This document shows positions 8,278 to 64,000 of a stretch of 64,000 nt of DNA, piece by piece. The position numbers and the translations under genes were made by a program. The stretch's first letter is position 1; each line of letters starts with the position of its first letter. Under the pieces are notes generated by a model. It was not told where the DNA came from, did no database searches, and was given only the letters and a program-made list of their open reading frames with translations. The DNA comes from Ranitomeya imitator (lineage: Eukaryota). Location: contig NC_091286.1 in assembly GCF_032444005.1 (NCBI RefSeq), positions 660,300,001-660,364,000 on the forward strand, in the 5' to 3' direction.

Positions 8278-9069
8278 TGTTATAGACCTGGTGGTTAGGA
8301 GCACCAGGAAAGACCTGATGGTTAAACTCACAGGACATGCTCTGGGAAGTGGGAACTCTGCTGACCGCAATCCCTAATCCTATCACACACACTAGAAATA
8401 GCCGTGGAGCGTACCTAACAGGCCTAGACGCCTCGACACAGCCTAAGGGCTAGCTACCCCTAGAGATAGAAAGTAAAGCCTACCTTGCCTCAGAGAAATT
8501 CCCCAAAGGAAAAGGCAGCCCCCCACAAATATTGACTGTGAGATAAGATGAAAGTCACAAACACAGGAATAAAAGAGGTTTCAGCAAAGGGAGGCCAGAC
8601 TACCTAAACAGACAGAGGATAGAAAAGGTAACTTTGCAGTCAGCACAAAAAACTACAAAAGACCACGCAGAGTGTGCAAAAAGACCCCCGCACCGATTCA
8701 CGGTGCGGAGGTGCCTCTCTGCCTCCCAGAGCTTCCAGCTAGCCAGACAGAATCATATTAGCAAGCTGGACAAGAAAACAAGAACAACAAAATAAACCAG
8801 CAGGGACTTAGCTTCTGCTGGAGTAGAGAGTTCACCAGAAAGATCCAAGAGCGAACTGAACCAGTACTGGAACATTGACAGGTGGCATGGAGTAACGATC
8901 TGGGTGGAGTTAAATAGAGCAGCCAGCCTAAGAATTAACCAGGTCACCTGTGGAAGGAACCTCAGAACCAGCAGTTCTACTCACAGCCACCAGAGGGAGT
9001 CCATGGACAGAACTCGCCGAAGTAACATTCATGACCACAGGAGGGAGTTCCAAAACAGAATTCACAACA
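8278..9069 (-). repeat. 3' LTR of the Gypsy element
   Basis: Direct repeat of 13251-14038 (about 10 substitutions and 2 small indels by eye); preceded on the minus strand by the PPT aaggggggg. Confidence 0.95.
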
Positions 9070-12000
9070 GTACCCCCCCTTGAGGAGGGGTCACCGAACC
9101 CTCACCAGAACCCCCAGGCCGATCAGGACGAGCCAAATGAAAGGCACAAACCAGATCAGCAGCATGAACATCAGAGGCAACAACCCAGGAATTATCTTCC
9201 TGACCATAACCCTTCCACTTGACCAGGTACTGGAGTTTCCGTCTTGAAATACGAGAATCTAAAATCTTCTCCACCACATACTCCAACTCCCCCTCGACCA
9301 ACACCGGGGCAGGAGGGTCAGCGGAGGGAACCATAGGCGCCACGTATCTCCGCAAGAACGACCTATGGAACACATTATGGATGGCAAAAGAAGCAGGAAG
9401 GGCCAAACGAAATGATACAGGATTAAGAACTTCAGAAATCTTATAAGGACCAATGAAACGAGGCTTAAACTTAGGAGAGGAAACCTTCATAGGAACATAA
9501 CGAGACGACAACCAAACCAAATCCCCAACACGAAGTCGGGGACCAACACAGCGACGGCGGTTAGCGAAACGTTGAGCCTTCTCCTGGGACAATGTCAAAT
9601 TGTCCACTACGTGAGTCCAAATTTGCTGCAACCTGTCCACCACAGAATCCACACCAGGACAGTCCGAAGGCTCAACCTGCCCTGAAGAAAAACGAGGATG
9701 GAAACCAGAATTACAGAAAAAAGGCGAAACCAAAGTAGCCTAGCTGGCCCGATTATTAAGGGCGAACTCAGCCAAAGGCAAGAAAGACACCCAATCATCC
9801 TGATCAACAGAAACAAAGCATCTCAGATATGTTTCCAAAGTCTGATTGGTTCGTTCGGTTTGGCCATTTGTCTGAGGATGGAAAGCCGAAGAAAAAGACA
9901 AATCAATGCCCATCTTAGCACAAAAGGACCGCCAAAACCTCGAAACAACCTGGGAACCTCTGTCCGAGACGATGTTCTCCGGAATGCCATGCAAACGAAC
10001 CACATGCTGGAAAAACAATGGCACCAAATCAGAGGAGGAAGGCAATTTAGACAAGGGTACCAAATGGACCATCTTAGAGAAGCGATCACAAACCACCCAG
10101 ATGACCGACATCCTTTGAGAGATAGGGAGGTCTGAAATAAAATCCATGGAAATATGCGTCCAGGGCCTCTTCGGGACCGGCAAGGGCAAAAGCAACCCAC
10201 TGGCACGAGAACAGCAGGGCTTAGCCCGAGCACAAGTCCCACAGGACTGTACAAAAGAACGCACATCCCGTGACATGGAAGGCCACCAAAAGGATCTAGC
10301 CACCAAATCTCTGGTACCAAAGATCCCGAGATGACCAGCCAACACCGAACAATGAACTTCAGAGATAACTCTACTAGTCCATCTATCAGGGACAAACAGC
10401 TTCTCCGCTGGACAATGGTCAGGTCTATCAGCCTGAAACTTCTGCAGCACCCGCCGCAAATCAGGGGAGATGGCAGACAAAATTACCCCCTCCTTGAGAA
10501 TACCATCCGGCTCAGGAACATCCGGAGAGTCAGGCACAAAACTCCTTGAAAGGGCATCAGCCTTCACATTCTTAGAGCCCGGAAGGTAAGAAACCACAAA
10601 ATCGAAACAGGAGAAAAACAGCGACCATCGAGCCTGTCTAGGATTCAACCGTTTGGCAGACTCGAGATAAGTTAAATTCTTGTGATCCGTCAAGACCACC
10701 ACGCGATGCTTGGCTCCTTCAAGCCAATGTCGCCACTCCTCGAATGCCCACTTCATAGCCAACAACTCTCGATTGCCAACATCATAATTACGCTCGGCAG
10801 GCGAAAACTTTCTAGAAAGAAAGCACATGGTTTCATCACCGAGCCATCAGAACTTCTCTGAGACAAAACAGCCCCTGCTCCAATCTCAGAAGCATCAACC
10901 TCGACCTGAAACGGGAGCGAAACATCTGGCTGGCACAGCACAGGGGCAGAAGAAAAACGACGCTTCAATTCCTGAAAAGCCTCAACGGCCGCAGAAGACC
11001 AATTGACCACATCAGCACCTTTCTTGGTCAAATCAGTCAACGGTATAACAACACTAGAAAAATTAGCGATGAAGCGACGGTAAAAATTAGCAAAACCCAG
11101 GAACTTCTGCAGGCTCTTCACAGATGTCGGCTGAGTCCAATCATAAATGGCCTGAACTTTAACAGGGTCCATCTCGACAGTAGAAGGGGAAAAAATGAAG
11201 CCCAAAAATGAAACCTTCTGAACTCCAAAGAGACATTTAGAACCCTTCACAAACAAGGAATTAGCACGAAGGACCTGCAACACCATTCTGACCTGCTTCA
11301 CATGAGACTCCCAATCATCCGAAAAGACCAAAATATCATCCAAATATACAATCATGAATCTATCCAGATACTCTCTGAAGATGTCATGCATAAAGGACTG
11401 AAACAGATGGAGCATTAGAAAGCCCGAATGGCATCACCAGGTACTCAAAATGGCCCTCGGGCGTATTAAATGCTGTTTTCCATTCATCGCCCCGTTTAAT
11501 ACGCACAAGATTATATGCCCCTCGAAGATCTATCTTGGTGAACCAACTAGCCCCCTTAATCCGAGCAAACAAATCAGACAGTAGCGGTAAAGGGTACTGA
11601 AATTTGACCGTGATCTTATTAAGAAGGCGGTAATCGATACAAGGTCTCAAAGAACCATCCTTCTTGGCCACAAAAAAGAAGCCTGCTCCCAACGGTGACG
11701 ACGACGGGCGAATATGCCCTTTCTCCAAGGACTCCTTCATATAACTCCGCATAGCGGTGTGTTCTGGCACAGATAAATTGAACAGTCGGCCCTTAGGAAA
11801 CTTACTACCAGGAATCAAATTAATGGCACAATCACAATCCCTATGAGGAGGTAGGGCACCGGCCTTGGGCTTATCAAATACATCCCGGTAATCCGACAAA
11901 AACTCAGGAACTTCTGAACGAGTGGAAGACGAAATTGACAGCAATGGAACATCACCATGTACCCCTTGACAACCCCAGCTGGACACAGACATAGATTTCC

Positions 12001-13234
12001 AATCCAATACTGGATTATGTACCTGTAGCCATGGCAACCCCAAAACGACCACATCATGCAGATTATGTAACACCAAAAAGCGAATATCCTCCTGATGTGC
12101 AGGAGCCATGCACATGGTCAATTGAGTCCAGTACTGAGGCTTATTCTTGGCCAAAGGCGTAGCATCAATTCCTCTCAATGGAATAGCACACTGCAAGGGC
12201 TCCAAGAAAAAACCACAGCGCCTAGCAAACTCCAAGTCCATCAAATTCAGGGCAGCCCCCGAATCCACAAACGCCATAACAGAATAGGACGACAAAGAGC
12301 AAATCAGAGTAAAGGACAAAAGAAATTTAGACTGTACCGTACCAATGGTGGCAGACCTAGCGAACCGCTTAGTGCGCTTAGGACAATCAGAGATAGCATG
12401 AGTGGAGTCACCACAGTAAAAACACAGCCCATTCTGACGTCTGTTTTCTTGCCGTTCAGCTCTGGTCAAAGTCCTATCACACTGCATAGGCTCAGAGAAT
12501 ACCGCCAAATGGTGCACAGCTTTGCGCTCACGCAAGCGCTGATCGATCTGAATGGCCAAGGACATAGACTCATTCAGACCAGCAGGCGTGGGAAATCCCA
12601 CCATGACATCCTTAAGGGCTTCAGAAAGACCTTTTCTGAAAATTGCCGCCAGGGCACACTCATTCCACTGAGTAAGCACAGACCACTTTCTAAACTTCTG
12701 ACAATACACCTCCGCTTCATCCTGACCCTGACACAAAGCCAGCAAGTTTTTCTCTGTCTGAGCCACTAATTTTGGTTCATCATAAAGCAATCCAAGCGCC
12801 AGAAAAAACGCATCTACATCACGCAATGCAGGATCTCCTGGCGCAAGGGAAAATGCCCAGTCTTGAGGGTCGCCACGCAACAAAGAAATAATGATTTTTA
12901 CTTGTTGAACTGGGTCACCAGAGGAGCGGGGTTTCAAAGCAAGAAACAATTTACAATTATATTTGAAATTCAGAAACTTAGATCTATCCCCAGAAAACAA
13001 GTCAGGAATTGGAATTCTAGGCTCTAACATTGGATTCCGAACTACAAAATCTTGAATGCTTTGTACCCTTGCCGTGAGATGATCCGCACAAGAGGACAGA
13101 CCTTGAATGTCCATATCTACACCTATGTCCTGAACCACCCAGAGGTAAAGGGGAAAAGAAAGACAAAACACACTGCAGAGAAAAAAAAATGGTCTCAGAA
13201 CTTCTCTTATCCCTCTATTGAGATGCATTAACAC
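9062..13234 (-). pseudogene. Gypsy gag-pol polyprotein pseudogene
   Basis: Gag CX2CX4HX4C ([14 protein letters not shown]), protease VDSGA, RT YLDD, RNase H, integrase HHCC and D,D,E region, chromodomain EYVVEKILDSR...YLVKWKGY. Broken by frameshifts near 11405 and 10822 and an in-frame TAG at 9740-9742. Confidence 0.95.
9070..9082 (-). other. Polypurine tract of the Gypsy element
   Basis: Minus strand aagggggggtac immediately before the 3' LTR start TGTTGTG. Confidence 0.85.
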
Positions 13235-14177: not shown

Positions 14178-15200
14178 ATGGGCAAGACCAAAGAGCTTTA
14201 TAAGGAGGATGTCAGGGACAAGATCATAGACCAGCACAATGCTGGAATGGGCTACAAAACCATAAGCAAGACGCTGGGTGAGAAGGAGACAACTGTTGGT
14301 GCAATAGTAAGAAAATGGAAGAAATACAAAATCACTCTCAATCGACATCGATCTGGGGCACCATGCAAAATCTCACTTGGTGGGGTATCCTTGATCATGA
14401 GGAAGGTGAGAGATCAGCTTAAAACTACACGAGGGGAACTTGCTAATGATCTCAATGCAGCTGGGACCACAGACACCAAGGGAACCATTGGTAACATGTT
14501 ATGCCGTAAAGGCTTATATTCCTGCAGTGCCCGCAAGGTCCTGCTGATCAAGAAGTCACATGTGCAGGCCCGTCTGAAGTTTGCCAATGAACACCTGGAT
14601 GATTCTGTGAGTGATTGGGAGAAGGTGCTGGGGTCAGATGAGACAAAAATTGAGCTCTTTCGCATTAACTCAACTTGCCGTCTTGGAGGAAGAGAAATGC
14701 TGCCTATGACTCAAAGAACACCATCCTCACTGTCAAGCATGGAGGTAGAAACATTATGTTTTGGGAGTGTTTCTCTGCTAAGGGCACAGGACTACTTCAC
14801 CACATCAATGGGAGAATGGATGGAGCCATGTATCCTGAGTGACAACCTCCTTCCCTCCACCAGGACATTAAAAATGGTTCATGGCTGGGTCTTCCAGCAA
14901 GACAATGACCCAAAACATACAGCCAAGGCAACAAAGGAGTGGCTCAAAAAGAAGTCCATTAAGGTCATGGAGTGGCCTAGCCAGTCTCCAAACCTTGATC
15001 CCATAGAAAACTTATGGAGGGATTTGAAGCTCCGAGTTGCCAAGCGACAGCCTCAAAATCTTAACGATTTAGAGATGATCTGCACAGAGGAGTGGACCAA
15101 AATTCCTCCTGACATGTGCAAACCTCATCATCAACTACAAAAAACATCTGACTGCTGTGCTTGCCAACAAGGGTTTTGCCACCAAGTATTAAGTCTTGTT
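14178..15200 (+). pseudogene. Tc1 DD34E transposase (decayed)
   Basis: MGKTKEL...paired-like [17 protein letters not shown]...[15 protein letters not shown] with 34 residues between D and E; the middle and C-terminus read out of the consensus frame. Confidence 0.9.
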
Positions 15201-15218
15201 TGCCAGAGGGATCAAATA

Positions 15219-17106
15219 CCGTATATACTAGAGTATAAGCCGACCCGAGTATAAGCCGACCCCCCTAATTTTGCCACAAAAAACTGGGAAAACTTATTGA
15301 CTCGAGTATAAGCCTAGGGTAGGAAATGCAGCAGCTACCGGTGAATTTCAAAAATAAAAATAGATGCTCCATACCGTTCATTATTGCCCCATAGATGCTC
15401 CATATCAAGCTGTGCCACATATAATTCTCCATATCGTTCATTGTTGCCCCATAGATGCTCCAAATAAAGCTGTGCCATATATAATGCTCTGCAGCGTTCA
15501 TTATGGCCCCATAGATGCTCCAAATAAAGCTGTGCCATATATAATGCTATGCACCGTTCATTATGGCCCCATAGATGCTCCAAATAAAGCTGTGCCATAT
15601 ATAATGCTCTGCACCATTCATTATGGCCCCATAGATGCTCCATATAAAGCTGTGCCATATAGAATGCTCTGCAGAGTTCATTATGGCCCTATAGATGCTC
15701 CATATAATGCTGTGCCATATATAATGCTCTGCACCGTTCATTATGGCCCCATAGATGCTCCTTATAAAGCTGTGCCATATAGAATGCTCTGCCCCGTTCA
15801 TTATGGCCCCATAGATGCTCCATATAAAGCTGTGCCATATAGAATGCTCTGCAGCGTTCATTATGGCCTTATAGATGCTCCATAGAAAGCTGTGCCATAT
15901 AGAATGTTCTGCACTGTTCATTATTGCCCCATAGATGCTCCTTATAAAGCTGTGCCATATATAATGTTCTGCACCGTTCATTATGGCCCCATAGATGCTC
16001 CTTATAATGCTGTGCCATATAGAATGTTCTGCACTGTTCATTATTGCCCCATAGATGCTCCTTATAAAGCTGTGCCATATATAATGTTCTGCACCGTTCA
16101 TTATGGCCCCATAGATGCTCCTTATAATGCTGTGCCATATAGAATGTTCTGCACTGTTCATTATTGCCCCATAGATGCTCCTTATAAAGCTGTGCCATAT
16201 AGAATGTTCTGCACTGTTCATTATTGCCCCATAGATGCTCCTTATAAAGCTGTGCCATATATAATGCTATGCACCGTTCATTATGGCCCCATAGATGCTC
16301 CAAATAAAGCTGTGCCATATATAATGCTCTGCCCCGTTCATTATGGCCCCATAGATGCTCCATATAAAGCTGTGCCATATATAATGTTCTGCACCGTTCA
16401 TTATGGCCCCATAGATGCTCCTTATAATGCTGTGCCATATAGAATGTTCTGCACTGTTCATTATTGCCCCATAGATGCTCCTTATAAAGCTGTGCCATAT
16501 ATAATGCTGCTGCAATAAAAAAAAAAAATCACATACCTTTCTTTGCTCAGGACGCCGGCGCTTTCAATATTTACCTGCTCCTCGTGCGGCTCCGTCTCCA
16601 GCACTGACGCTCAGCAGAGGGTGTGCACTGACTACATCACTGCGCCCTCTGACCTGAGCGTCACAGCTAGAGGACGCTAGAGACGGAGCAGCAACGGAGC
16701 GAGGAGCAGGTAAATATCGCGCAGCGCTCCCCTCCCCGTATACTTACCTGCTCCTGGCGCGGTCCCTGCAGTCCCTGGCGCTGCATCTTCTTCCTGTATT
16801 GAGTGGTCACAGTTACCGCTCATTTACAGCAATGAATATGCGGCTTCACCCCTATGGGAGGTGGAGCCGCATATTCATTTCTGTAATGAGTGGTACCATG
16901 TGACCACTCAGTACAGGAAGAATCTGCAGCGCCGGGGAAGCAGGGACTGCAGGGACCGCACCGGGAGCAGGTAAGTATAATTACTCAGCCCCCACTCCCC
17001 CTCCCCTGCTGACCTTCCGGTATATGACTCGAGTATAAGCCGAGAGGGGGACATTCAGCCCCCAAAAATGGGCTGAAAATCTCGGCTTATACTCGAGTAT
17101 ATAATG
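15219..17106. mobile_element. Non-autonomous Tc2/pogo-like element inside the Tc1 right IR
   Basis: TIR CCGTATATACTAGAGTATAAGCCG / CGGCTTATACTCGAGTATATAATG; TA TSD (15217-15218 and 17107-17108) restores gatcaaaTActtgtttctc. Confidence 0.85.
15360..16509. repeat. 60-bp tandem array (about 19 copies) inside the MITE
   Basis: Unit atagatgctccatataaagctgtgccatatataatgctctgcaccgttcattatggcccc aligns in register with the 60-base lines. Confidence 0.97.
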
Positions 17107-18090
17107 TACTTGTTTCTCACTGCAAAAAGCAAATACATTTATATAATTTATACAATGTCATTTTCTGGATTTTGTTTTTGATATTCTATCTCTCAATGTT
17201 AAAATTAACCTACCCTTAAAACTGTAGACTGTTTATGTCTTTGTCAGTGGGCAAACTTACAAAATCAGCAAGGGATCAAAAAATTATTTCATTCACTGTA
17301 GCAAAGCTGGATTTGTCACAGAGTCCAATGCAGTGAAAAGAAGGGTTACCCAGCAATGTAACTGAGCTACATTTGCAGAGTGAGTTAAGAAGTCGCTTGT
17401 AGCTGCCAGGATTCCACCAACCTGAATACTCAGGTGGCATGTCGCGGCATGAGTTGGCCTGTAAGGACTGGGAGCGTGACCTCACAATAGAGTGCTATTT
17501 ACCATGATAACTCAATGTATGGTAAAGCAGAGAGAGTATCAAGGCTGGGGGAAGACAGAGAGGCTGGGACAGGTAACAACTGCCTATATGTGGAATGCAC
17601 CTAATCGTCGCCCACCGCACATAATATAAGAACCATTTGACCATCATTTCAGAAATGGTTGTCTCAAGGCAAGTAAGCAAATTGTATATTTGTTCCATAT
17701 TTATCATAAAGTCCTCATTACTCGCTTGCTCGGTGCTTATTTACTTCCTTCCTTGCTCCCTCGCTGGCACATAATTGCAATCAGGGCCCTTGTAATTAAT
17801 ATATTCACATACACATAGCAACTGTTGCACCCAGGAGGCTTCGCCTTGCTCTGATGAGCGAGTGTTTCTGTGTACTCTATGGCCGGACTGTGCCCAGCTC
17901 CTAGGTAAGCAGTGCAGGCTCACCCCTCCCTAGGGCACAGTTTATAGTCAGCCCTTTCTTTGCACATTGATCCGTAGCTCCAGAGGAGGGAGGAGAAGGG
18001 TCAATGATTACTTGATATAACTAGACCATTCTCAAGATTCAGCTTTTACCTTGGACGCTCAGGTAGGAAGGATTAAGATTTGTGATCCAG

Positions 18091-29420: not shown

Positions 29421-29994
29421 GGTTTTCATGCAGAAGACCGCCCAGAAAACATCTTTTGTATCATTTTTTGAGTTGTTTCCTGAGTTTTTTTTGACAGTTT
29501 TGGCCACCATTATTTGTTTTTTTCGAGGCTTTGCCCATGGTTTTTGTGACGTCTTTTCTACTAACATTTTCCAGTTGTATTTTTCGTTCCATTGTATAAT
29601 GAAGAAACCACAAGCAGTTTTTCTTAAAAAAACAAAAACGATAGTAAAGTGCTCCAAAACAGACATAGTTTGAGCTTTCCCATCGACTTATATTGTAAAG
29701 TACAGGTCATCTTTGGAGCGGAAAGCGCCAGAAGAATGGATGTCACTTACGGTGTTTCAAATGCTTGGTGTTCGACAGATGTTCAAAAGCCTGAGGATAT
29801 GCACAGCAAGTAGTTCTTACAGAGAAATATATATGTTCGCTTTTTTGATCATTCTATGATAGTCTTTATTGATAATTTCCATGGCGGAATTCACATGTGC
29901 ACATAGCGTGATGTGGATTTAAATGTATATATATATATATATACTAGATGGTGGCCCGATTCTAACGCATCAGGTATTCTAGAATATGCATGTC

Positions 29995-32900
29995 CACGTA
30001 GTATATTGCACAGCCCATGTAGTATATTGCCCAGCCACGTAGTATATTGCCCAGCCACGTAGTATACAGCATAGAGCCACGTAGTATATTGCACAGCCCA
30101 TGTAGTATATTGCCCAGCTACGTAGTATATTGCCCAGCCACGTAGTATACAGCATAGAGCCACGTAGTATATTGCCCAGTCACGTAATATATTGCCCAGC
30201 TACGTAGTATATTGGCCAGTCACGTAGTATATTGCCCAGTCACGTAGTATATTGCCCAGCCACGTAGTATATTGCCCAGCCACGTAGTATATTGCACAGC
30301 CACGTAGTATACAGCACACAGCCACGTAGTATATTGCCCAGCCATGTAGTATATTGCCCAGTCACATCGTATATTGCCCAGTCACATCGTATATTGCCCA
30401 GTCACCTAGTATATTGCCCAGCCACGTAGTATATTGCACAGCCACGTAGTATATTGCCTAGTCACGTAGTATACAGCACAGAGCCACGTAGTATATTGCC
30501 CAGTCACGTAGTATATTGCCCAGTGACGTAGTATATTGCCCAGCCACGTAGTGTATTGCCCAGCTACATAGTATATTGCCCAGCCACATAGTATATTGCC
30601 TAGTCACGTAGTATACAGCACAGAGCCACGTAGTATATTGCCCAGTCACGTAGTATATTGCCCATCCACGTAGTATATTGCCCAGTGACGTAGTATATTG
30701 CCCAGCTATATAGTATATTGCCCAGCCACGTAGTATACAGCACAGAGCCACGTAGTATATTGCCCAGCCACGTAGTATATTGCCCAGCCACGTAATATAT
30801 TGTACAGCCACGTAGTATATTGCCTAGTCACGTAGTATACAGCACAGAGCCACGTAGTATATTGCCCAGTCACATAGTATATTGCCCAGCCACGTAGTAT
30901 ATTGCCCAGTCACGTAGTATACAGCACAGAGCCACGTAGTATATTGCCCAGTCACGTAGTATATTGCCCAGCTACGTAGTATATTGCCCAGCCACGTAGT
31001 ATATTGCCCAGCTACATAGTATATTGCCCAGCCACATAGTATATTGCCTAGTCACATAGTATACAGCACAGAGCCACGTAGTATATTGCCCAGTCACGTA
31101 GTATATTGCCCATCCACGTAGTATATTGCCCAGTGACGTAGTATATTGCCCAGCTATATAGTATATTGCCCAGCCACGTAGTATACAGCACAGAGCCACG
31201 TAGTATATTGCCCATCCACGTAGTATATTGCCCAGTGACGTAGTATATTGCCCAGCTATGTAGTATACAGCACAGAGCCACGTAGTATATTGCCCAGTCA
31301 CATAGTATATTGCCCAGCCACGTAGTATATTGCCCAGTCACGTAGTATACAGCACAGAGCCACGTAGTATATTGCCCAGTCACGTAGTATATTGCCCAGC
31401 TACGTAGTATATTGCCCAGCCACGTAGTATATTGCCCATCCACGTAGTATATTGCCCAGTGACGTAGTATATTGCCCAGCCATGTAGTATATTGCCCAGC
31501 CACGTAATATATTGTACAGCCACGTAGTATATTGCCCAGCCACATAGTATACAGCACAGAGCCACATAGTATATTGCCCAGTCACGTAGTATATTGCCCA
31601 GCCACGTAGTATACAGCACAGAGCCATGTAGTATATTGCCCAGGCACGTAGTATATTGCCCAGCCACGTAGTATATTGCCCAGTCACGTAGTATATTGCC
31701 CAGTCATGTAGTATATTGCCCAGCCACGTAGTATACAGCACAGAGCCACGTAGTATATTGCCCAGCCACATAGTATATTACCCAGCCACGTAGTATAGTA
31801 ACATAGTAACATAGTTAGTAAGGCCGAAAAAAGACATTTGTCCATCCAGTTCAGCCTATATTCCATCATAATAAATCCCCAGATCTACGTCCTTCTACAG
31901 AACCTAATAATTGTATGATACAATATTGTTCTGCTCCAGGATGACATCCAGGCCTCTCTTGAACCCCTCGACTGAGTTCGCCATCACCACCTCCTCAGGC
32001 AAGCAATTCCAGATTCTCACTGCCCTAACAGTAAAGAATCCTCTTCTATGTTGGTGGAAAAACCTTCTCTCCTCCAGACGCAAAGAATGCCCCCTTGTGC
32101 CCGTCACCTTCCTTGGTATAAACAGATCCTCAGCGAGATATTTGTATTGTCCCCTTATATACTTATACATGGTTATTAGATCGCCCCTCAGTCGTCTTTT
32201 TTCTAGACTAAATAATCCTAATTTCGCTAATCTATCTGGGTATTGTAGTTCTCCCATCCCCTTTATTAATTTTGTTGCCCTCCTTTGTACTCTCTCTAGT
32301 TCCATTATATCCTTCCTGAGCACCGGTGCCCAATACTGGACACAGTACTCCATGTGCGGTCTAACTAGGGATTTGTACAGAGGCAGTATAATGCTCTCAT
32401 CATGTGTATCCAGACCTCTTTTAATGCACCCCATGATCCTGTTTGCCTTGGCAGCTGCTGCCTGGCACTGGCTGCTCCAGGTAAGTTTATCATTAACTAG
32501 GATCCCCAAGTCCTTCTCCCTGTCAGATTTACCCAGTGGTTTCCCATTCAGTGTGTAATGGTGACATTGATTCCTTCTTCCCATGTGTATAACCTTACAT
32601 TTATCATTGTTAAACCTCATCTGCCACCTTTCAGCCCAAGTTTCCAACTTATCCAGATCCATCTGTAGCAGAATATTATCTTCTCTTGTATTAACTGCTT
32701 TACATAGTTTTGTATCATCTGCAAATATCGATATTTTACTGTGTAAACCTTCTACCAGATCATTAATGAATATGTTGAAGAGAACAGGTCCCAATACTGA
32801 CCCCTGCGGTACCCCACTGGTCACAGCGACCCAGTTAGAGACTATACCATTTATAACCACCCTCTGCTTTCTATCACTAAGCCAGTTACTAACCCATTTA

Positions 32901-33290
32901 CACACATTTTCCCCCAGACCAAGCATTCTCATTTTGTGTACCAACCTCTTGTGCGGCACGGTATCAAACGCTTTGGAAAAATCGAGATATACCACGTCCA
33001 ATGACTCACCATGGTCCAGCCTATAGCTTATTATATTGTACAGCCACGTAGTATATTGCCCAGCCACGTAGTGTACAGCACAGAGCCATGTAGTATATTG
33101 CCCAGTCATGTAGTATATTGCCCAGTCACGTAGTATATTGCCCAGTCACGTAGTATACAGCACAGAGCCACGTAGTATATTGCCCATCCACGTAGTATAT
33201 TGCCCAGTGACGTGGTATATTGCCCAGCTACGTAGTATATTGCCCAGTCACGTAGTATACAGCACAGAGCCACGTAGTATATTGCCCATC
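29995..33290. repeat. 20/22-bp composite minisatellite inside the Helitron (split by CR1)
   Basis: Units gcccagccacgtagtatatt (20 bp) and gtagtatacagcacagagccac (22 bp); interrupted at 31797-33028. Confidence 0.95.
31797..33028 (-). mobile_element. 5'-truncated CR1 LINE with an uninterrupted RT C-terminal ORF
   Basis: DVVYLDFSKAFDTVPH, SGVPQGSVLGP, FADDTK, CVQYWAP...; about 370 open codons to the natural stop at 31904; (ctatgtta)n-type 3' tail at about 31797-31815. Confidence 0.95.
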
Positions 33291-35334
33291 CACATTTGTC
33301 ACAGGTTAAAAAAAAATAAACATACTCCCCTTTCCGATGACCAGTTGTAGTTCGATCACATGACCGTGACGTCATGGCAGGTTCTTCTCGCGCAGGGCCT
33401 GTGATTACGTCACGGTCCCATGACCGTGACGTCATGGAAGGGCCTTGTCGCGCAGGCGCGCAGGACCTGTGATGACGTCGCGGTCACATAACCGTGACGT
33501 CATGGAAGGTCCTTGTCACGCAGGACCTGTGATGACGCCGCGGTCACATGACCGTGACATCATGGAAGGTCCTTGTTGCATACCATTCTTAGCACCGGAG
33601 CGTCTGGAGGAGCGGGAAAGGCGCCGGAGGGTGAGTATATGTTGATTTTTTATTTTTTAACATTAGATCTTTTTACTATTGACGCTGCATAGGCAGCATC
33701 AATAGTAAAAACTTGGTCACACAGGGTTAATAGCGACGGTAACGGAGTGAGTTACCCGCGGCATAACGCGGTCCGTTACCGCTGGCATTAACCCTGTGTA
33801 AGCGGTGACTGCGGGAGTATGGAGTGGGCGCCGACTGCAGGGGAATAGGGAGAGACTAATCGGACTGTGGCCGTCGCTGATTGGTCGCGGCACCCATGAC
33901 AGGCAGCTGGCGAGACCAATCAGCGACTTGGATTCCATGACAGACAGAGGCCGCGACCAATGAATATCCGTGACAGACAGAAGGACAGACAGACAGAAAG
34001 ACGGAAGTGACCCTTAGACAATTATATAGTAGATACTGTATAGTATATATATATATTTATTTAAAATTTTAGAATTTTATTTTTAAATTCTGAACTTTGT
34101 AAAATAAAAATTTGGTTTCTGTCCCCATTTTCTGAGACCCGTAACTTATTTATTCTTCCATTGAGGAATGTTTTTGTTGGTCAACATACAACATACTTTT
34201 TTTTCGCATTCATTGTACTTTTGGGGGGAGAAGTTCAATGTCCTAAAAACTTGAAGTCTGGTGTTTCCACACCCTTTTTCAGTCTGTAACGTCTTTATAA
34301 TATGATGGACTGATTTCTATAGTCTTGACGATACCAAAGATGTTTAATTTTTTCTTTCTTTATTTTTTAAATGGGAAAAGGAGTGTGATTATTTTTTTTT
34401 ATATATATATAGGATAGTATTGCATTATGTATATTACTGATCACCTGTGAAGCCCAGCCACTGGAAGGACTTCATGGGAGTACTGAGTTGGCAGTAGGGG
34501 ACTTTTATATCAACGCATCAATTCCCGTAATCTTTGCTCCCCAATTTCTCACAGCCATCCATCCCCACGATGGTAACCATGAGACCCTTGTTAAACATTC
34601 ACTATTGGGGCCCAGGAAATTCAAATGACAGCTCTGGAGGACAATTTACAACCTCTCCCAGAACATCCAGGAGGTTCCAGGAAAAAAACTTGACAATCTG
34701 CGGCGCCCACATAAACCACCCAGGTGGTAGCGTTGCCTGAATATTTTTTAGCTCGGTTCCAGCTTTATGAAACTCAGTCCCAGTGTCCAGATGTTACGCA
34801 CCTTCACATAGGCAAGGGAATGTGAAGAATTAATGGGTACGGGAAGCAAATCACATGGTAAATGGAGGTCGTGGTCATTTAAATTAATTTTCATCGGCCC
34901 AATTAGTTGCATCACTCATTCTTCCACATGACCATTTAAAGTCGGCAAGTATGGAAATAGGCCCATGGAAGGGGCTTCATAGGGTAAAAAATAAAAGGTG
35001 AGCAAAGTTTAAAAAATTTGCTTAGGTTTTAATTTTAATCCGAACTGGAAGGAAAATTAAAATCCATCACGACATTTTTGATGCCCTGAGGTCTTTCCAG
35101 ACCCCTAAACAGAGGTGAGAGAAGGGGTTAAAAAAATAATAAAAGATTATACTCAACTTGCCTATGCCGCCACATCACCTGTCCTGCCAGCTTCGCCTGC
35201 CGCCAATCCTCACGCGGTCATGTTATTGCCATGCGCTCCACGTGACCACTCGATTCCTATTCAGGACCAGTAAGCCTGGAGGCCGAAAGATCCGAAGTAA
35301 AGATCGTAGGCTCGGACATGGAGCTGCGGAGGTT

Positions 35335-59958: not shown

Positions 59959-60785
59959 GTGGATACATCTGGTTCATTTTTCATTTCACCTGAAAGCTTA
60001 AAAGGGTCCTTGCAAAAAAAAAAATGCCCCTTGGTATCAGTACTGCAACTTCATGCTTCATGCCTTCATGTAAGCAATTATATCATATTTTACAGTCATT
60101 TTTTATTTTTTATTCATTGCTATCAGTAAAATATGGTAAATGATTGACAGATTAATTGTCAATCTTGCTGGAAGCCATGCTATCCTACACTCATCAACAT
60201 TTTAGTAGTCCAAATTGGGAAATAGGTAATAAATATCTGAGCGTTAGGGGGTCCAAAAATCAGCACCCCCACTGATCAGCAGTTTGCAGTTCCTACAGAA
60301 GTAGCAGGAAGTAACCAGTGTACATTGCTGGCACAGCACAGCTCCTTGCAGTGTGTAGTGGCAGTTTTCAGGTACTGCAGCTCAGATCACTGCCACTTCA
60401 ATAGGATCTGAGCTGCAGGACTGAGAGCTGCCACCATTCAGTCCATGAAGCTATAAACCAAGTAACCAAGAGTACAGGATACAAAATAGTCACCTATCTA
60501 CATGTTGGTCAAATGTATTAACCCTTGTAGCATTATAAATCCTATAAATGGGATCTAAGGGGAAATGTTTCTCCTTGTGAAGAGTGACAAGCCAGGCCTG
60601 TCATGTCAGAGTGAGGAGACTTAAATGCCTTGCAAGCTCCTCTGGGAAATTAAATATGCAAATTGCTTCGTTGGAGAAAAAGAGGACTAGAACTATAGTA
60701 CCACCCACTGGAAGCAGCAGTCAATATTGACCCTTTAACGAGCCTTTCAATATGACTCAGGATAAAAGCCAATCCAGAATCTCAA

Positions 60786-60830
60786 TTTGCAGACATGGTG
60801 TTTCAGGGTATTGCCCCTCATCAGTGCAAA
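60786..60830 (-). ncRNA. Minimal type I hammerhead ribozyme (core intact)
   Basis: UUUGCA CUGAUGA GGGG-CAAUA-CCCU GAAA CACCAUG UC^UGCAAA: perfect 6-bp stem I, all core nucleotides present, G10.1-U11.1 wobble, short stem III; predicted cleavage between 60792 and 60791. Confidence 0.85.
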
Positions 60831-60946
60831 GTATGAGATCTAATTTGTGTAAAAAAGAGTCAAAGACTGGGATCTAAGGAGTAACATTTCTCCTTGTGTA
60901 GAGTGACAAACTAGACCTGACGTCATGCTCCTGTCGGAAGTTAAAT

Positions 60947-60954
60947 ATGCAAAT
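60947..60954. promoter_or_regulatory. Octamer ATGCAAAT in the retrozyme monomer (also at 60656-60663 and 61185-61192)
   Basis: Exact octamer conserved in all three monomer copies; PSE-like tcactct(a/t)cacaaggagaaa downstream on the minus strand (starting at 60906 and about 60587). Confidence 0.55.
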
Positions 60955-61008
60955 TGCCTCTTCAGATCCCAGTCTTAGCCTCTCACTTAGCCAAATCAGA
61001 TATCATGC

Positions 61009-61053
61009 TTTTCACTGACGAGGGGCAATACCCCAAAACACTGTGTCTGCAAA
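61009..61053 (+). ncRNA. Minimal type I hammerhead ribozyme, mutated copy
   Basis: UUUUCA CUGACGA GGGG-CAAUA-CCCC AAAA CACUGUG UC^UGCAAA; G12 changed to A (61035) and one stem I mismatch, so probably inactive. Confidence 0.75.
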
Positions 61054-61242
61054 TTGGGATTCTGGTTTGGTTTTTGTCCTAAGTCATGGGTCAAGGCTCT
61101 TTAAAGGGTTGATATTGACTTCTAGGATTGCTACTTCCAATAGGTGGTGCTAGAGTTCTTGTCCTCTTCCTCTCTGAAGAGGTGATTTGCATATTAAATC
61201 ATATAAAGACATACGTGTTGTCTTCCCTCATAATGTAATAAT

Positions 61243-63237
61243 GTCCCCCATTCTGTAATAATGTCACCCATCCTGGGCCCGTTCCTGGTATAATGTCCCC
61301 CATCCTGGGCCCATTCTGTAATAATGTCACCCATCCTGGGCCCGTTCCTGGTATAATGTCACCCATTCTGGGCCCGTTTCTGGTATAAGGTCACCCATCC
61401 TGGGCCCGTTCTTGGTATGTCCCCCATCCTGGGCCCATTCCTGGTATAATGTCCCCCATCCTGGGCCCCTTCCTGGTATGATGTCCCCTATCCTGGGCCC
61501 GTTCCTAGTATAATGTCCCCCATCCTGGGCCCGTTCTTGGTATAATGTCCCCCATCCTGGGCCCATTACTGGTATAATGTCCCCCATCCTGGGCCGGTTC
61601 TTGGTATAATGTCCCCCATCCTGGGCCCATTCCTGGTATAATGTCCCCAATCCTGGGCCCATTCCTGGTATGATGTCCCCCATCCTGGGCCCCTTCTTGG
61701 TATAATGTCCCCCATCCTGGGCCCGGTCCTGGTAAAATGTCCCCCATCCTGGGCCCGTTCCTGGTATAATGTCCCCCATCCGGGGCCCGTTCCTGGTATA
61801 ATGTCCCCAATCCTGGGCCCCTTCCTGGTATAATGTCACCCATCCTCGGCCCGTTCCTGGTATAATGTCCACCATCCTGGGCCCGTTCCTGGTATAATGT
61901 CACCCATCCTGGGCCCGTTCTTGGTATAATGTCTCCATCCTGGGCCCATTCCTGGTATAATGTCCCCCATCCTGGGCCCCTTCTTGGTATAATGTCTCCA
62001 TCCTGGGCCCATTCCTGGTAAAATGTCCCCCATCCTGGGCCCGTCCCTCATCCTGGCCCCGTTCCTGGTATAATGTCCCCCATCCTGGGCCCCTTTCTGG
62101 TATAATGTCACCCATCCTCGGCCCATTCCTGGTATTATGTCCCCCATCCTGGGCCCATTCCTGGTATAATGTCCCCCATCCTGGGCCCCTTCTTGGTATA
62201 ATGTCCCCCATCTTGGGCCCGATCCTGGTAAAATGTCCACTATCCTGGGCCAGTTCCTGGTATAATGTCCCCAATCCTGGGCCCCTTCCTGGTATAATGT
62301 CACCCATCCTCGGCCCGTTCCTGGTATAATGTCCCCCATCCTGGGCCCGTTCCTGGCATAATGTCCCCCATCCTGGGCCCATTCCTGGTATGATGTCCCC
62401 CATCCTGGGCCCGTTCCTGGTATAATGTTTCCCATCCTAGGCCCGTTCTTGGTATAATGTCCCCCATTCTGTGCCCATTCCTAGTATTATGTCCTCCATC
62501 CTAGGCCACTTCCTGGTATAATGTCCCCCATCCTGGGCCCTATCCTGGTATGATGTCCCCCATCCTAGGCCCGTTCCTGGTATAATGTCCCCCACCCTGG
62601 GCCCGTTCCTGGTATAATGTCCCCCATCCTGGGCCCGTTCCTGGTATAATGTCCCCCATCCCGGGCCTGATCCTGGTAAAATGTCCCCCATCCTGGGCCC
62701 CTTCCTGGTATGATGTCCCCCATCCTGGGCCCGATCCTGGTATGATGTCCCCCATCCTGGGCCCGATCCTGGTATGATGTCCCCCATCCTGGGCCCGATC
62801 CTGGTATGATGTCCCCCATCCTGGGCCCCTTCCTGGTATAATGTCCCCCATCCTGGGCCCATTCCTGATATAATGTCCCCCATCCTTGGCCCCTTCCTGG
62901 TAAAATGTCCCCCATCCTGGGCCCCTTCCTGGTATGATGTCCCCCATCCTGGGCCCGATCCTGGTATGATGTCCCCCATCCTGGGCCCGATCCTGGTATG
63001 ATGTCCCCCATCCTGGGCCCGATCCTGGTATGATGTCCCCCATCCTGGGCCCGATCCTGGTATGATGTCCCCCATCCTGGGCCCCTTCCTGGTATAATGT
63101 CCCCCATCCTGGGCCCATTCCTGATATAATGTCCCCCATCCTTGGCCCCTTCCTGGTAAAATGTCCCCCATCCTGGGCCCCTTCCTGGTATAATGTCCCC
63201 CATCCTGGGCCCATTCCTGGTATAATGTCCCCCATCC
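61243..63237. repeat. 32-bp C-rich minisatellite, about 62 copies
   Basis: Unit tggtataatgtcccccatcctgggcccgttcc. Confidence 0.97.
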
Positions 63238-63750
63238 TTTTTTTCCATTTCTAATTATTGCTCCCACTGTTGATTTCTTCACTCCAAGCTTGTTGGCTAT
63301 TGCAGATTCAGTCTTCCCAGCCTGGTGCAGGGCTACAATTTTGTTTCTGGTGTCCTTTGACAGCTCTTTGGTCTTCACCATAGTGGAGTTTGGAGTCAGA
63401 CTGTTTGAGGGTGTGCACAGGTGTCTTTTTATACTGATAACAAGTTTAAACAGGTGCCATTACTACTGGGTAATGAGTGGAGGAAAGAGGAGACTCTTAA
63501 AGAAGAAGTTACAGGTCTGTGAGAGCCAGAAATCTTGATTGTTTGTTTCTGACCAAATACTTATTTTCCACCATAATATGCAAATAAAATGATAAAAAAA
63601 ACAGACAATGTGATTTTCTGGATTTTTTTTTCTCAGTTTGTCTCCCATAGTTGAGGTCTACCTATGATGTAAATTACAGACGCCTCTCATCTTTTTAAGT
63701 GGTGGAACTTGCACTATTGCTGACTGACTAAATACTTTTTTGCCCCACTG
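63238..63750 (-). mobile_element. Tc1 5' fragment (left TIR plus transposase N-terminus) truncated at the minisatellite
   Basis: TA|CAGTGGGGCAAAAAAGTATT on the minus strand; ORF from 63381 MVKTKELSKDTRNKIVALHQAGKTESAIANKLGVKKSTVGAIIR. Confidence 0.9.
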
Positions 63751-63753
63751 TAT

Positions 63754-64000
63754 ATGGGGAGTGCACTTTACTATATATCCTATATTGGGAGTGCATTATA
63801 CTATATGTACTATATGGGGAGTGCATTATACTATATATCCTATAATAATAATAATAATAATAAATAATAATAATAATATCCTATATTGGGAGTGCATTAT
63901 ACTATATGTACTATATGGGGAGTGCATTATACTATATATCCTATATCGGGAGTGCATTATACTATATGTACTATATGGGGAGTGCATTATACTATATATC
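63754..64000. repeat. 30-bp minisatellite (alternating 60-bp dimer) with an embedded (TAA)n tract; runs off the window
   Basis: atatggggagtgcattatactatatatcct / atattgggagtgcattatactatatgtact; (taa)n at about 63843-63876. Confidence 0.9.

What the first reader, a model, noticed from the sequence alone, without database searches (positions are those of the whole stretch)
60549..61194. Frog satellite-2-like retrozyme: ~320-bp monomer with a hammerhead ribozyme, present as a divergent inverted pair
Seen: a complete minimal type I hammerhead on the minus strand (60830-60786) with a perfect stem I, CUGAUGA, stem II, GAAA and GUC cleavage triplet. A second, G12A-mutated copy lies on the plus strand (61009-61053). 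The monomer period is 319 bp and there is no ORF. Known: newt satellite 2 (~330-bp monomers, self-cleaving transcripts) and metazoan non-LTR retrozymes have this size and a minimal type I hammerhead with a short stem III that favours dimeric folding. Inference: this is one copy of a dispersed anuran retrozyme family that could produce monomeric or circular RNAs. It is a non-coding mobile RNA system that ORF-based annotation would miss.
Basis: partly seen in the sequence, partly recalled or inferred. Interest (0 to 1): 0.9.

Follow-up and report, generated by a model that had tools for sequence, protein, structure and literature searches.

The report
Decayed frog hammerhead retrozyme insertion
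This is a real but old, mutation-worn copy of a very abundant roughly 319-bp non-coding repeat carrying a self-cleaving hammerhead ribozyme, a kind of mobile RNA element already well described in amphibians, so it is ordinary rather than surprising.

Summary
The minus strand 60830-60786 spells a complete type I hammerhead (HHR). It has a 6-bp helix I, CUGAUGA, a 4-bp helix II with a G10.1-U11.1 wobble, GAAA, a 3-bp helix III and a GUC cleavage triplet. A homologous dead copy (G12A plus a helix I mismatch) lies at 61009-61053 on the plus strand. My descriptor finds only this site in the window and about 0.003 hits per random 64-kb window. Rfam does not call it.

The 651-bp block (60549-61199) is a single insertion. 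It holds one full 319-bp unit, a 5'-truncated partial unit upstream of it, and a 5'-truncated inverted copy joined head-to-head. That layout is the typical insertion scar of Penelope-like elements (PLEs).

Public DNA contigs from three species labels lay 16,000-18,000 pieces per run on the block. They also show 319-bp head-to-tail joints, and two other species carry the same flank-to-element junction. So this is an old, fixed copy of a huge family.

The two arms differ by 20%. The core defects of both are CpG-decay products. Each strand has only one HHR, and a read-through RNA folds into a roughly 240-bp hairpin. This locus therefore cannot release monomers or circles.

It is a non-LTR retrozyme / satellite-2-like repeat, a known kind. 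The scan holds 29 similar notes elsewhere in this genome.

The parts
60549..60867 (-). Copy A: one full 319-bp unit of the repeat, sense on the minus strand, with no ORF and 42% G+C
   Evidence: Direct-repeat spacing of 319; blastn of the unit against the window; alignment A1; G+C and stop-free stretch
60779..60839 (-). Extended hammerhead of copy A. Distal stem AUCUCA/UGAGAU (60839-60834 / 60784-60779), 5' bulge UAC (60833-60831), helix I (60830-60825 / 60791-60786), CUGAUGA (60824-60818), helix II GGGG/CCCU with loop CAAUA (60817-60805), GAAA (60804-60801), helix III plus C17 (60800-60792). The predicted cut lies between 60792 and 60791.
   Evidence: Read from the sequence. Only descriptor hit in the window. 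The MFE fold keeps the distal stem, helix I and helix II. The layout matches the axolotl constructs.
60868..60966 (-). Partial unit C: a 5'-truncated copy directly upstream of copy A in the sense direction. It has a 28-nt deletion and no hammerhead. It forms the partial tandem.
   Evidence: Direct repeats D3 and D4, 85-86% identical to the 3' part of copy A; alignment A1; the family sequence at the deletion seen as loose ends before 60925
60958..61199 (+). Copy B: an inverted, 5'-truncated copy (242 nt) joined head-to-head to C. It ends at a family-typical terminus (...GCATATTAAAT).
   Evidence: Inverted repeats I1-I3. Pairwise alignment with A gives 46 mismatches in 233 columns. Loose ends behind 61181 show that many family copies stop here.
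61000..61060 (+). Dead hammerhead of copy B. It carries a helix I mismatch (61012 U), G12>A (61035), a weakened distal stem (61002, 61057) and bulge UGC.
   Evidence: Sequence. The family majority has G at 61012, G at 61035, C at 61002 and A at 61057 (table 3). The hammerhead-compatible structure scores only -5.4 kcal/mol against an MFE of -13.1.
60958..60966 (.). Head-to-head junction: 9 nt (CTCTTCAGA) that align both as the start of copy B and, reverse-complemented, as the start of partial unit C (microhomology)
   Evidence: Overlap of I1 (starts 60958) with I3 (60941-60966); alignment A1
60543..60548 (.). Possible target-site duplication TATAAA, left copy (the right copy is at 61202-61207). 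Weak: short and AT-rich.
   Evidence: Flanks printed

Best explanation
The 651-bp block 60549-61199 is one old, fixed insertion of a non-autonomous, non-coding retroelement of the non-LTR retrozyme / satellite-2-like kind. Its unit is about 319 nt and carries a canonical metazoan type I hammerhead.

How the family works (inferred from the literature, not shown here). Multimeric transcripts of tandem copies self-cleave at GUC|U. Two neighbouring ribozymes pair through their palindromic helix III. The unit-length RNAs are circularised by a host tRNA ligase and are copied back into DNA by the reverse transcriptase/endonuclease of a Penelope-like element acting in trans.

What the locus shows. A full unit is preceded by a 5'-truncated unit, and an inverted 5'-truncated copy is joined head-to-head to them. 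This is the typical Penelope-type integration scar.

State of the locus. The copies have since drifted about 20% apart, and methylation-driven CpG decay has hit the ribozyme core. The ancestral C11.1-G12 dinucleotide became UG in copy A and CA in copy B. The CpG in loop III became CA in A and UG in B. With one hammerhead per strand, a weakened copy A, a dead copy B and a foldback that sequesters both, the locus is an inert fossil and not an RNA-producing unit.
For: Motif real and non-random.

Family abundance:
- 16,382, 18,417 and 18,232 contigs from DNA runs of three species labels lay on the 926-nt stretch at >=80% identity.
- Summed depth is 1e4-1e6 inside 60549-61199, against about 10-20 in the unique flank 60455-60485.

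Circular contiguity and tandems:
- Joints 60847->60549 with 20 letters between (period 319) occur in all three DNA runs.
- At 60847, 150-198 loose ends per run continue with the family version of the unit junction.

The family ribozyme is canonical. The majority letters at 61002, 61012, 61035 and 61057 restore the distal stem, helix I and G12. None of the 41 listed majority differences falls in 60786-60830.

CpG decay: there are 5 reciprocal TG/CA sites between A and B, two of them in the hammerhead. The window's CpG observed/expected ratio is 0.45.

Old and fixed:
- A contig of organism B spans 60300-60719 (about 7% different).
- A contig of organism D spans 60372-60584 (about 8% different). 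Both cross the flank/element junction (table 8).
- The K2P distance between A and B is 0.23.

Architecture matches the published Penelope-like insertion structure: partial tandem plus an adjacent inverted 5'-truncated copy (PMC8557442).

Kinship of non-LTR retrozymes with Penelope pLTRs: bioRxiv 10.64898/2026.07.22.740005.

Dimer dependence: helix III does not fold as a hairpin (0 kcal/mol). As a homodimer it gives -7.4 kcal/mol for the CpG state and -10.3 for the ACACGUGU variant, but only -3.2 for copy A. Axolotl retrozymes behave this way (PMC7229834).

Foldback: the minus-strand RNA of the block folds at -321.9 kcal/mol, z = -27.
Against: - Rfam's curated hammerhead models do not report the site.
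- No self-cleavage, transcript end or circular junction could be examined. All runs offered were assembled contigs, and the only 'RNA?' runs are guesses.
- No Penelope RT/GIY-YIG gene lies in the window, so the partner is inferred.
- The target-site duplication is only 6 AT-rich bases.
- The two outward ends are not at the same unit position: A runs 100 nt further than B.
- Summed contig depth is not a copy number.
- 147 rows of the variant table were hidden, so I could not read the family state at U11.1 (60805) directly.
Confidence: 0.8

Rival explanations
1. One reading: this copy is a working retrozyme that yields unit-length or circular RNAs.
For: Copy A keeps every invariant core nucleotide and a perfect helix I. 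Axolotl HHR_Amex2 still cleaves with a U-U mismatch at the base of helix II (PMC7229834), so a G-U wobble need not be fatal.
Against: - There is only one hammerhead per strand, because partial unit C lacks it. Two cuts are needed to free a unit.
- The helix III palindrome is broken in copy A: homodimer -3.2 against -7.4 kcal/mol.
- Copy B has G12A.
- The foldback of -322 kcal/mol buries the motif.
- The 'RNA?' run shows zero depth on the unique flanks 60424-60516.
Confidence: 0.03
2. The block is the heavily 5'-truncated end (pseudo-LTR) of an autonomous Penelope-like element, not a separate non-autonomous retrozyme family.
For: Penelope insertions are mostly 5'-truncated and carry hammerheads in their pLTRs (PMC4209133; PMC8557442). 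The insertion architecture is the same. The scan notes Penelope elements with GIY-YIG in this genome (unchecked).
Against: - The unit closes on itself at 319 bp, here (the C/A junction and the start of B) and in contigs of three species. A Penelope tandem would have a period of several kb.
- The ribozyme is the canonical form (helix I 6 bp, helix II 4 bp, with helix III). It is not the minimal Penelope form (no helix III, helix II 6-8 bp, helix I 4-5 bp).
- According to the 2026 preprint the two categories are related, so this rival is partly a matter of naming.
Confidence: 0.1
3. A plain satellite DNA fragment spread by recombination or segmental duplication, with no RNA intermediate. The hammerhead would be a passenger.
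For: Tandem joints exist. Newt satellite 2 was first described as a satellite (PMC7229834).
Against: The block is a short, isolated 1.3-unit piece with an inverted truncated copy and sharp edges inside TE-rich single-copy flanks (depth falls from more than 1e4 to about 10 within 100 bp). That pattern fits insertion, not array erosion. Thousands of distinct contigs run on into unlike sequence (5,665 of 16,382 only partly on it in X1), which indicates dispersed copies.
Confidence: 0.05
4. The conserved foldback has been kept as a hairpin-RNA locus that feeds small RNAs against the family.
For: A very stable hairpin of about 240 bp. The locus is retained in at least three species labels.
Against: The arms have drifted to 78-81% complementarity at roughly neutral-looking rates, with CpG decay on both. 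No small-RNA data are available. Retention of a neutral insertion over about 8% flank divergence needs no selection.
Confidence: 0.02

Closest known systems
Non-LTR retrozymes of metazoans (Cervera & de la Pena 2020, PMC7229834), including axolotl Rtz_331 / Rtz_353 and the Xenopus families of Li, Clavereau & Pollet 2026 (bioRxiv 10.64898/2026.07.22.740005)
   Same: - Non-coding unit of about 320 bp (the amphibian mean is 316 bp), G+C below 45%, and a tandem-capable unit.
- Canonical type I hammerhead with a 6-bp helix I, a 4-bp helix II and a short palindromic helix III that needs a dimer.
- Same extended layout as the axolotl constructs: 6-bp distal stem, 3-nt 5' bulge, 6-bp helix I, and a single U opposite the bulge.
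- The family variant of helix III, ACACGUGU, equals that of axolotl Ax353.
- Very high copy number.
   Different: This locus holds only 1.3 sense units and one ribozyme per strand. Both ribozymes are mutated. No RNA evidence was obtainable. Sequence similarity of the unit to published amphibian families outside the ribozyme was not tested.
Penelope-like element insertions (pLTR, partial tandem, inverted 5'-truncated copy; Craig et al. 2021, PMC8557442)
   Same: A full copy is preceded by a truncated copy, and an inverted 5'-truncated copy abuts its 5' side. The hammerhead lies in the repeated part.
   Different: There is no RT/GIY-YIG ORF, and the unit is 319 bp rather than 3-4 kb. The ribozyme is canonical, not the minimal Penelope form. 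A 30-40-bp 'tail' could not be identified with confidence.
Newt satellite 2 (Epstein & Gall 1987, as summarised in PMC7229834)
   Same: Monomer of about 330 bp; type I hammerhead with a weak helix III that is active as a dimer (Forster et al. 1988, cited in PMC4209133).
   Different: It is a caudate, not an anuran, family. It occurs as long arrays with demonstrated transcripts. Homology beyond the ribozyme was not tested here.

Membership tests
Hammerhead ribozyme, type I (canonical metazoan form) | Invariant core: C3 U4 G5 A6 N7 G8 A9, G12 A13 A14, A15.1-U16.1, H17 | tested here: met
   Copy A has CUGAUGA, GAAA, A-U and C17. Copy B fails at G12 (61035 A). The family majority there is G.
Hammerhead ribozyme, type I (canonical metazoan form) | Helix I about 6 bp and open-ended, helix II about 4 bp, helix III short with a palindromic loop (PMC4209133) | tested here: met
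   Helices of 6, 4 and 3 bp. G10.1-U11.1 is a wobble in copy A and G-C in copy B. The helix III palindrome is present in the CpG state and in the family variant, but broken in copy A.
Hammerhead ribozyme, type I (canonical metazoan form) | Loop 1 / loop 2 elements for the tertiary contact | tested here: inconclusive
   The layout (3-nt 5' bulge UAC, single U opposite, loop 2 CAAUA) parallels the axolotl constructs (UUC or UGC bulge; loop 2 CACUA or CAAAAA). From my memory only, it also parallels the Schistosoma ribozyme. No structural or kinetic test was possible.
Hammerhead ribozyme, type I (canonical metazoan form) | Reaches the gathering score of an Rfam hammerhead model | tested here: not met
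   0 hits at gathering score in the window. No hammerhead model at E<=10 on 1.7 kb. Only 13 bits to RAGATH-1-hammerhead on 81 nt. The alignment suggests the very short helix III is the likely cause.
Hammerhead ribozyme, type I (canonical metazoan form) | Self-cleavage after H17 | not testable with these tools
   Needs in vitro transcription or RNA end mapping. Only assembled contigs were available.
Non-LTR retrozyme | Short (150-450 bp) non-coding unit, G+C below 50%, found as tandem repeats | tested here: met
   319 bp, 42% G+C, longest stop-free stretch 49 aa. There are 1.3 tandem units at this locus. Joints of period 319 occur in contigs of three species labels.
Non-LTR retrozyme | At least two hammerheads in the same orientation flanking a unit (needed to release it) | tested here: not met
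   At this locus there is one motif per strand. The feature may hold for other family copies; scan notes claim so, but they are unchecked.
Non-LTR retrozyme | Expressed as linear and circular unit-length RNA | not testable with these tools
   No run on record as RNA holds the stretch. X19 is 'RNA?' by guess and is contigs only.
Penelope-type (PLE) insertion | 5' truncation, partial tandem, adjacent inverted 5'-truncated copy | tested here: met
   C (60966->60868) plus A (60867->60549) in sense, and B (60958->61199) inverted, joined head-to-head with 9 nt of microhomology.
Penelope-type (PLE) insertion | RT plus GIY-YIG ORF in the element | tested here: not met
   No such ORF lies in or near the block. 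The window's RTs are Gypsy-type and CR1-like. The element would therefore be non-autonomous.
Penelope-type (PLE) insertion | 30-40-bp tail at one end; target-site duplication | tested here: inconclusive
   The ends differ by 100 nt in unit position. The only candidate duplication is TATAAA.

The most novel reading that the evidence does not exclude
The insertion scar of this canonical-hammerhead retrozyme (a partial tandem plus a head-to-head inverted 5'-truncated copy) would be direct structural evidence that non-LTR retrozymes are integrated by Penelope-like RT/GIY-YIG machinery acting in trans. This goes beyond the sequence similarity and co-occurrence reported so far. If so, the C11.1-G12 CpG in the ribozyme core would act as a built-in methylation-driven 'fuse' that silences copies in vertebrate genomes.
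Probability: 0.45. Interest if true: 0.45.

Novelty: new member of a known kind. Interest (0 to 1): 0.25.

Why it matters
For annotation, the block should be masked as a hammerhead-bearing non-autonomous retroelement. ORF-based and Rfam-based pipelines both miss it.

For biology, the locus itself is inert. Its architecture adds a small, independent line of support to the recent proposal that animal retrozymes ride on Penelope-like elements. It also shows how CpG decay hits the ribozyme core at C11.1-G12.

The family's very high abundance in several related species makes those genomes suitable for testing retrozyme circular-RNA biology in anurans. So far only in vitro cleavage of one Xenopus element has been reported (bioRxiv 10.64898/2026.07.22.740005).

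Tried and rejected
- Rfam at gathering score on the whole window: no hit.
- Rfam at E<=10 on 60000-61700: no hammerhead hit, only weak miRNA-model and CsrB matches to neighbouring repeats, which I take as chance or low complexity.
- Rfam on 81 nt: 13 bits to RAGATH-1-hammerhead.
- Other copies in the window: none by blastn with word size 7 or by core regex.
- Family copies in metagenome contigs (two patterns) and viral contigs: 0 hits, as expected for microbial collections.
- RNA evidence: no run on record as RNA and no raw-read run was offered, so 5' ends at 60791 and circular junctions could not be examined.
- A Penelope ORF in the window: rejected. The RTs are Gypsy-type (9062-13234) and CR1-like (31904-33109).
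- Literature search for the Schistosoma ribozyme string to back my recollection of its UAC bulge: 0 papers.
- Scan look-up by sequence: blank.
- The 'opposite strands' joints (for example 60665<->61180 and 60795<->41041-type pairs such as 60795<->61041) are not real inversions. They join equivalent unit positions of the two arms, so they are mapping switches between copy A and copy B.

Full report
**What is there**

The plus strand 60786-60830, read on the minus strand, is UUUGCA CUGAUGA GGGG CAAUA CCCU GAAA CAC-CA-UGUC UGCAAA. This is a complete type I hammerhead.
- Helix I has six Watson-Crick pairs.
- The core strands CUGAUGA and GAAA are intact.
- Helix II has four pairs, the innermost being G10.1-U11.1.
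- Helix III is A15.1-U16.1, C-G, A-U around three loop bases.
- C17 is base 60792, so the scissile bond lies between 60792 and 60791.

Outside helix I the RNA continues with a 3-nt bulge UAC (60833-60831) on the 5' side, a single U (60785) on the 3' side, and a second 6-bp stem AUCUCA/UGAGAU. ViennaRNA's MFE for the 61-nt stretch keeps the distal stem, helix I and helix II.

A relaxed descriptor (helix I >=5 bp, helix II >=3 bp, helix III >=2 bp) finds only this site on either strand of the window. It found one site in 300 simulated 64-kb windows. The motif is not a chance match.

Rfam does not call it. There is nothing at gathering score and no hammerhead model at E<=10 on 1.7 kb. On 81 nt there is a 13-bit partial alignment to RAGATH-1-hammerhead in which almost the whole model helix III is deleted. 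I record that as a failed database test. I attribute it to the very short helix III.

**The second copy and the block**

The plus strand 61009-61053 is the homologous motif. It has a helix I mismatch (61012), C at the free position 7, C11.1 and G12>A (61035).

Repeat analysis and alignment resolve the block 60549-61199. In the sense orientation of copy A (the minus strand) it contains:
- a 5'-truncated partial unit C (60966->60868, with a 28-nt deletion and no ribozyme);
- directly after it, a full 319-bp unit A (60867->60549);
- abutting C head-to-head across 9 nt of microhomology (60958-60966), an inverted 5'-truncated copy B (60958->61199).

The block has 42% G+C and no stop-free stretch above 49 aa.

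**It belongs to a very large family shared among species**

I laid the contigs of three DNA runs (species labels A, B, D) and one small run guessed to be RNA on 60300-61225 at >=80% identity. This placed 16,382, 18,417 and 18,232 contigs from the DNA runs and 265 from the fourth run.

Summed depth is about 10-20 in the unique flank (60455-60485). It jumps to 1e4-1e6 exactly between 60549 and 61199. The tool warns that this is not a copy number, but the contrast and the number of distinct contigs show a very abundant family.

Contigs in all three species join 60847 back to 60549 with 20 letters between, giving a period of 319. At 60847, 150-198 loose ends per run continue with the family's version of the unit junction. 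The unit is therefore circularly contiguous: it occurs in tandem or in inserts longer than one unit.

About 130 loose ends behind 61181 run into unrelated A-rich sequence just after ...GCATATTTAAA. Copy B therefore ends at a preferred family terminus.

The 'opposite strand' joints in that table link equivalent unit positions of A and B. They are mapping switches, not inversions.

**The family ribozyme is canonical**

Of the 41 best-supported positions where the family majority differs from the window, four lie in copy B's extended ribozyme. All four move it to the copy-A or canonical state:
- 61002 A>C and 61057 G>A restore the distal stem;
- 61012 T>G restores helix I;
- 61035 A>G restores G12 (72% of depth in X1).

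None of the listed positions lies within 60786-60830. However, 147 rows were hidden, so the family state at U11.1 could not be read directly.

**Decay**

A and B differ at 46 of 233 aligned positions (19.7%; K2P 0.23) plus a 9-nt indel. Five sites are reciprocal TG/CA pairs, the signature of independent decay of one ancestral CpG. The window's CpG observed/expected ratio is 0.45. Two of the five sites are in the ribozyme.
- C11.1-G12 became UG in A (the U11.1 wobble) and CA in B (the lethal G12A).
- The loop III CpG became CA in A and UG in B.

Many private differences of one copy are corrected by the other copy and by the family majority. That fits two copies made from one template and then decaying in place.

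Helix III does not fold as a hairpin in any version (0 kcal/mol). As a homodimer it gives -7.4 kcal/mol in the CpG state and -10.3 for the family variant ACACGUGU seen in loose ends, but only -3.2 in copy A. So copy A has a weakened helix II base pair and has lost the dimerisation palindrome, and copy B is dead.

**Age**

A contig of organism B covers 60300-60719 (31 substitutions and 17 gap positions). A contig of organism D covers 60372-60584 (17 substitutions). Both cross the left flank/element boundary (table 8). The insertion therefore predates the split of these species labels, in line with the 20% divergence between the arms.

**What the locus can and cannot do**

Releasing a unit needs two cuts in one transcript, and each strand has a single motif.

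A read-through minus-strand RNA folds into an imperfect hairpin of about 240 bp (-321.9 kcal/mol, z = -27) that pairs copy A's ribozyme with antisense B.

The run guessed to be RNA has no depth on the unique flanks.

I conclude that the locus is a fossil.

**Comparison with what is known**

- Canonical metazoan type I hammerheads have a helix I of 6 bp, a helix II of 4 bp and a 1-2-bp helix III with a small palindromic loop, and they act as dimers (PMC4209133).
- They sit in tandem repeats of about 300 bp with low G+C, called non-LTR retrozymes. [quoted passage not shown] Amphibian ones need dimers, and a tRNA ligase closes the circles (PMC7229834).
- The axolotl constructs printed in that paper's supplement have the same extended layout as copy A: 6-bp distal stem, 3-nt 5' bulge, 6-bp helix I, and one U opposite. 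Ax353 has helix III ACACGUGU, identical to the variant seen here in the family.
- Penelope-like insertions are typically 5'-truncated partial tandems with an adjacent inverted 5'-truncated copy (PMC8557442). That is the architecture of this block.
- A 2026 preprint finds non-LTR retrozymes in all seven amphibians sampled (mean unit 316 bp) and 57 families in Xenopus. It finds kinship with Penelope pLTRs, and strong in vitro cleavage for only one of nine tested dimers.

No Penelope ORF lies in this window. Its RTs are a Gypsy-type polyprotein and a CR1-like LINE.

**Earlier notes of this scan**

Twenty-nine first-reader notes on other pieces of the same genome mention hammerhead/retrozyme repeats with units of 312-357 bp. 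Several describe inverted duplications or a '5' inversion', and two mention Penelope elements with GIY-YIG. I could not check them. They agree with the reading given here but are not independent evidence.

**Verdict**

The family assignment (satellite-2-like / non-LTR retrozyme with a canonical type I hammerhead) is supported. The idea that this locus makes monomeric or circular RNA is not. It is an ordinary, decayed member of a known kind of element. Its modest added value lies in the Penelope-type scar and the CpG-driven decay of the ribozyme core.

Noticed in passing
window 60359-60433: Near-perfect hairpin (arms 60372-60388 / 60405-60421) with sub-threshold matches to several miRNA models (best mir-2329 at 31 bits, gathering score 90). 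Contig depth here is 1e3-1e4 against about 10 nearby, so it is a repeated, MITE-like palindromic element rather than a miRNA gene.
   Followed up: partly
window 61258-63238 and 63239-63381 (minus strand): A 32-bp minisatellite (about 62 copies, 88-90% matches) has expanded directly after the first 48 codons of a Tc1/Sleeping-Beauty-type transposase (HTH_SB, E 1.8e-17). This creates long spurious ORFs. The hammerhead block ends about 30-60 bp from the start of this array. Penelope-like elements are reported to prefer microsatellite targets (PMC8557442), but the proximity may be coincidence.
   Followed up: partly
window 60486-60547: The 60 bp left of the insertion have contig depth of about 500-850 (against about 11 further left). 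The target site therefore lies in another moderately repeated sequence of unknown identity.
   Followed up: no
window 9062-13234 (minus strand): Ty3/Gypsy-type retrotransposon in four frame-broken ORFs: gag, protease, RT, RNase H, integrase, SH3_Tf2-1 and chromodomain.
   Followed up: partly
window 14178-15254 (plus strand): Tc1/mariner transposase ORF of 358 aa with HTH_SB, HTH_Tnp_Tc3_2 and DDE_3 domains. It appears uninterrupted.
   Followed up: no
window 29891-33435 (minus strand): The C-terminal part of a CR1-like LINE reverse transcriptase (31904-33109, RVT_1 E 4e-25) is embedded in a tandem repeat whose translation reads GQYTTWLGNILR... on both sides.
   Followed up: no
window 60804-60805 and 61034-61035; loose ends at 60795: The hammerhead core contains a CpG (C11.1-G12). 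The two copies here carry its two decay products. A sizeable share of family contigs (about 28% of depth at 61035, and a loose-end consensus in organism D) also has A12. Either a hot spot recurs or an A12 subfamily amplified without an active ribozyme.
   Followed up: partly
window 63751-64000: A 30/60-bp tandem repeat running off the end of the window.
   Followed up: no
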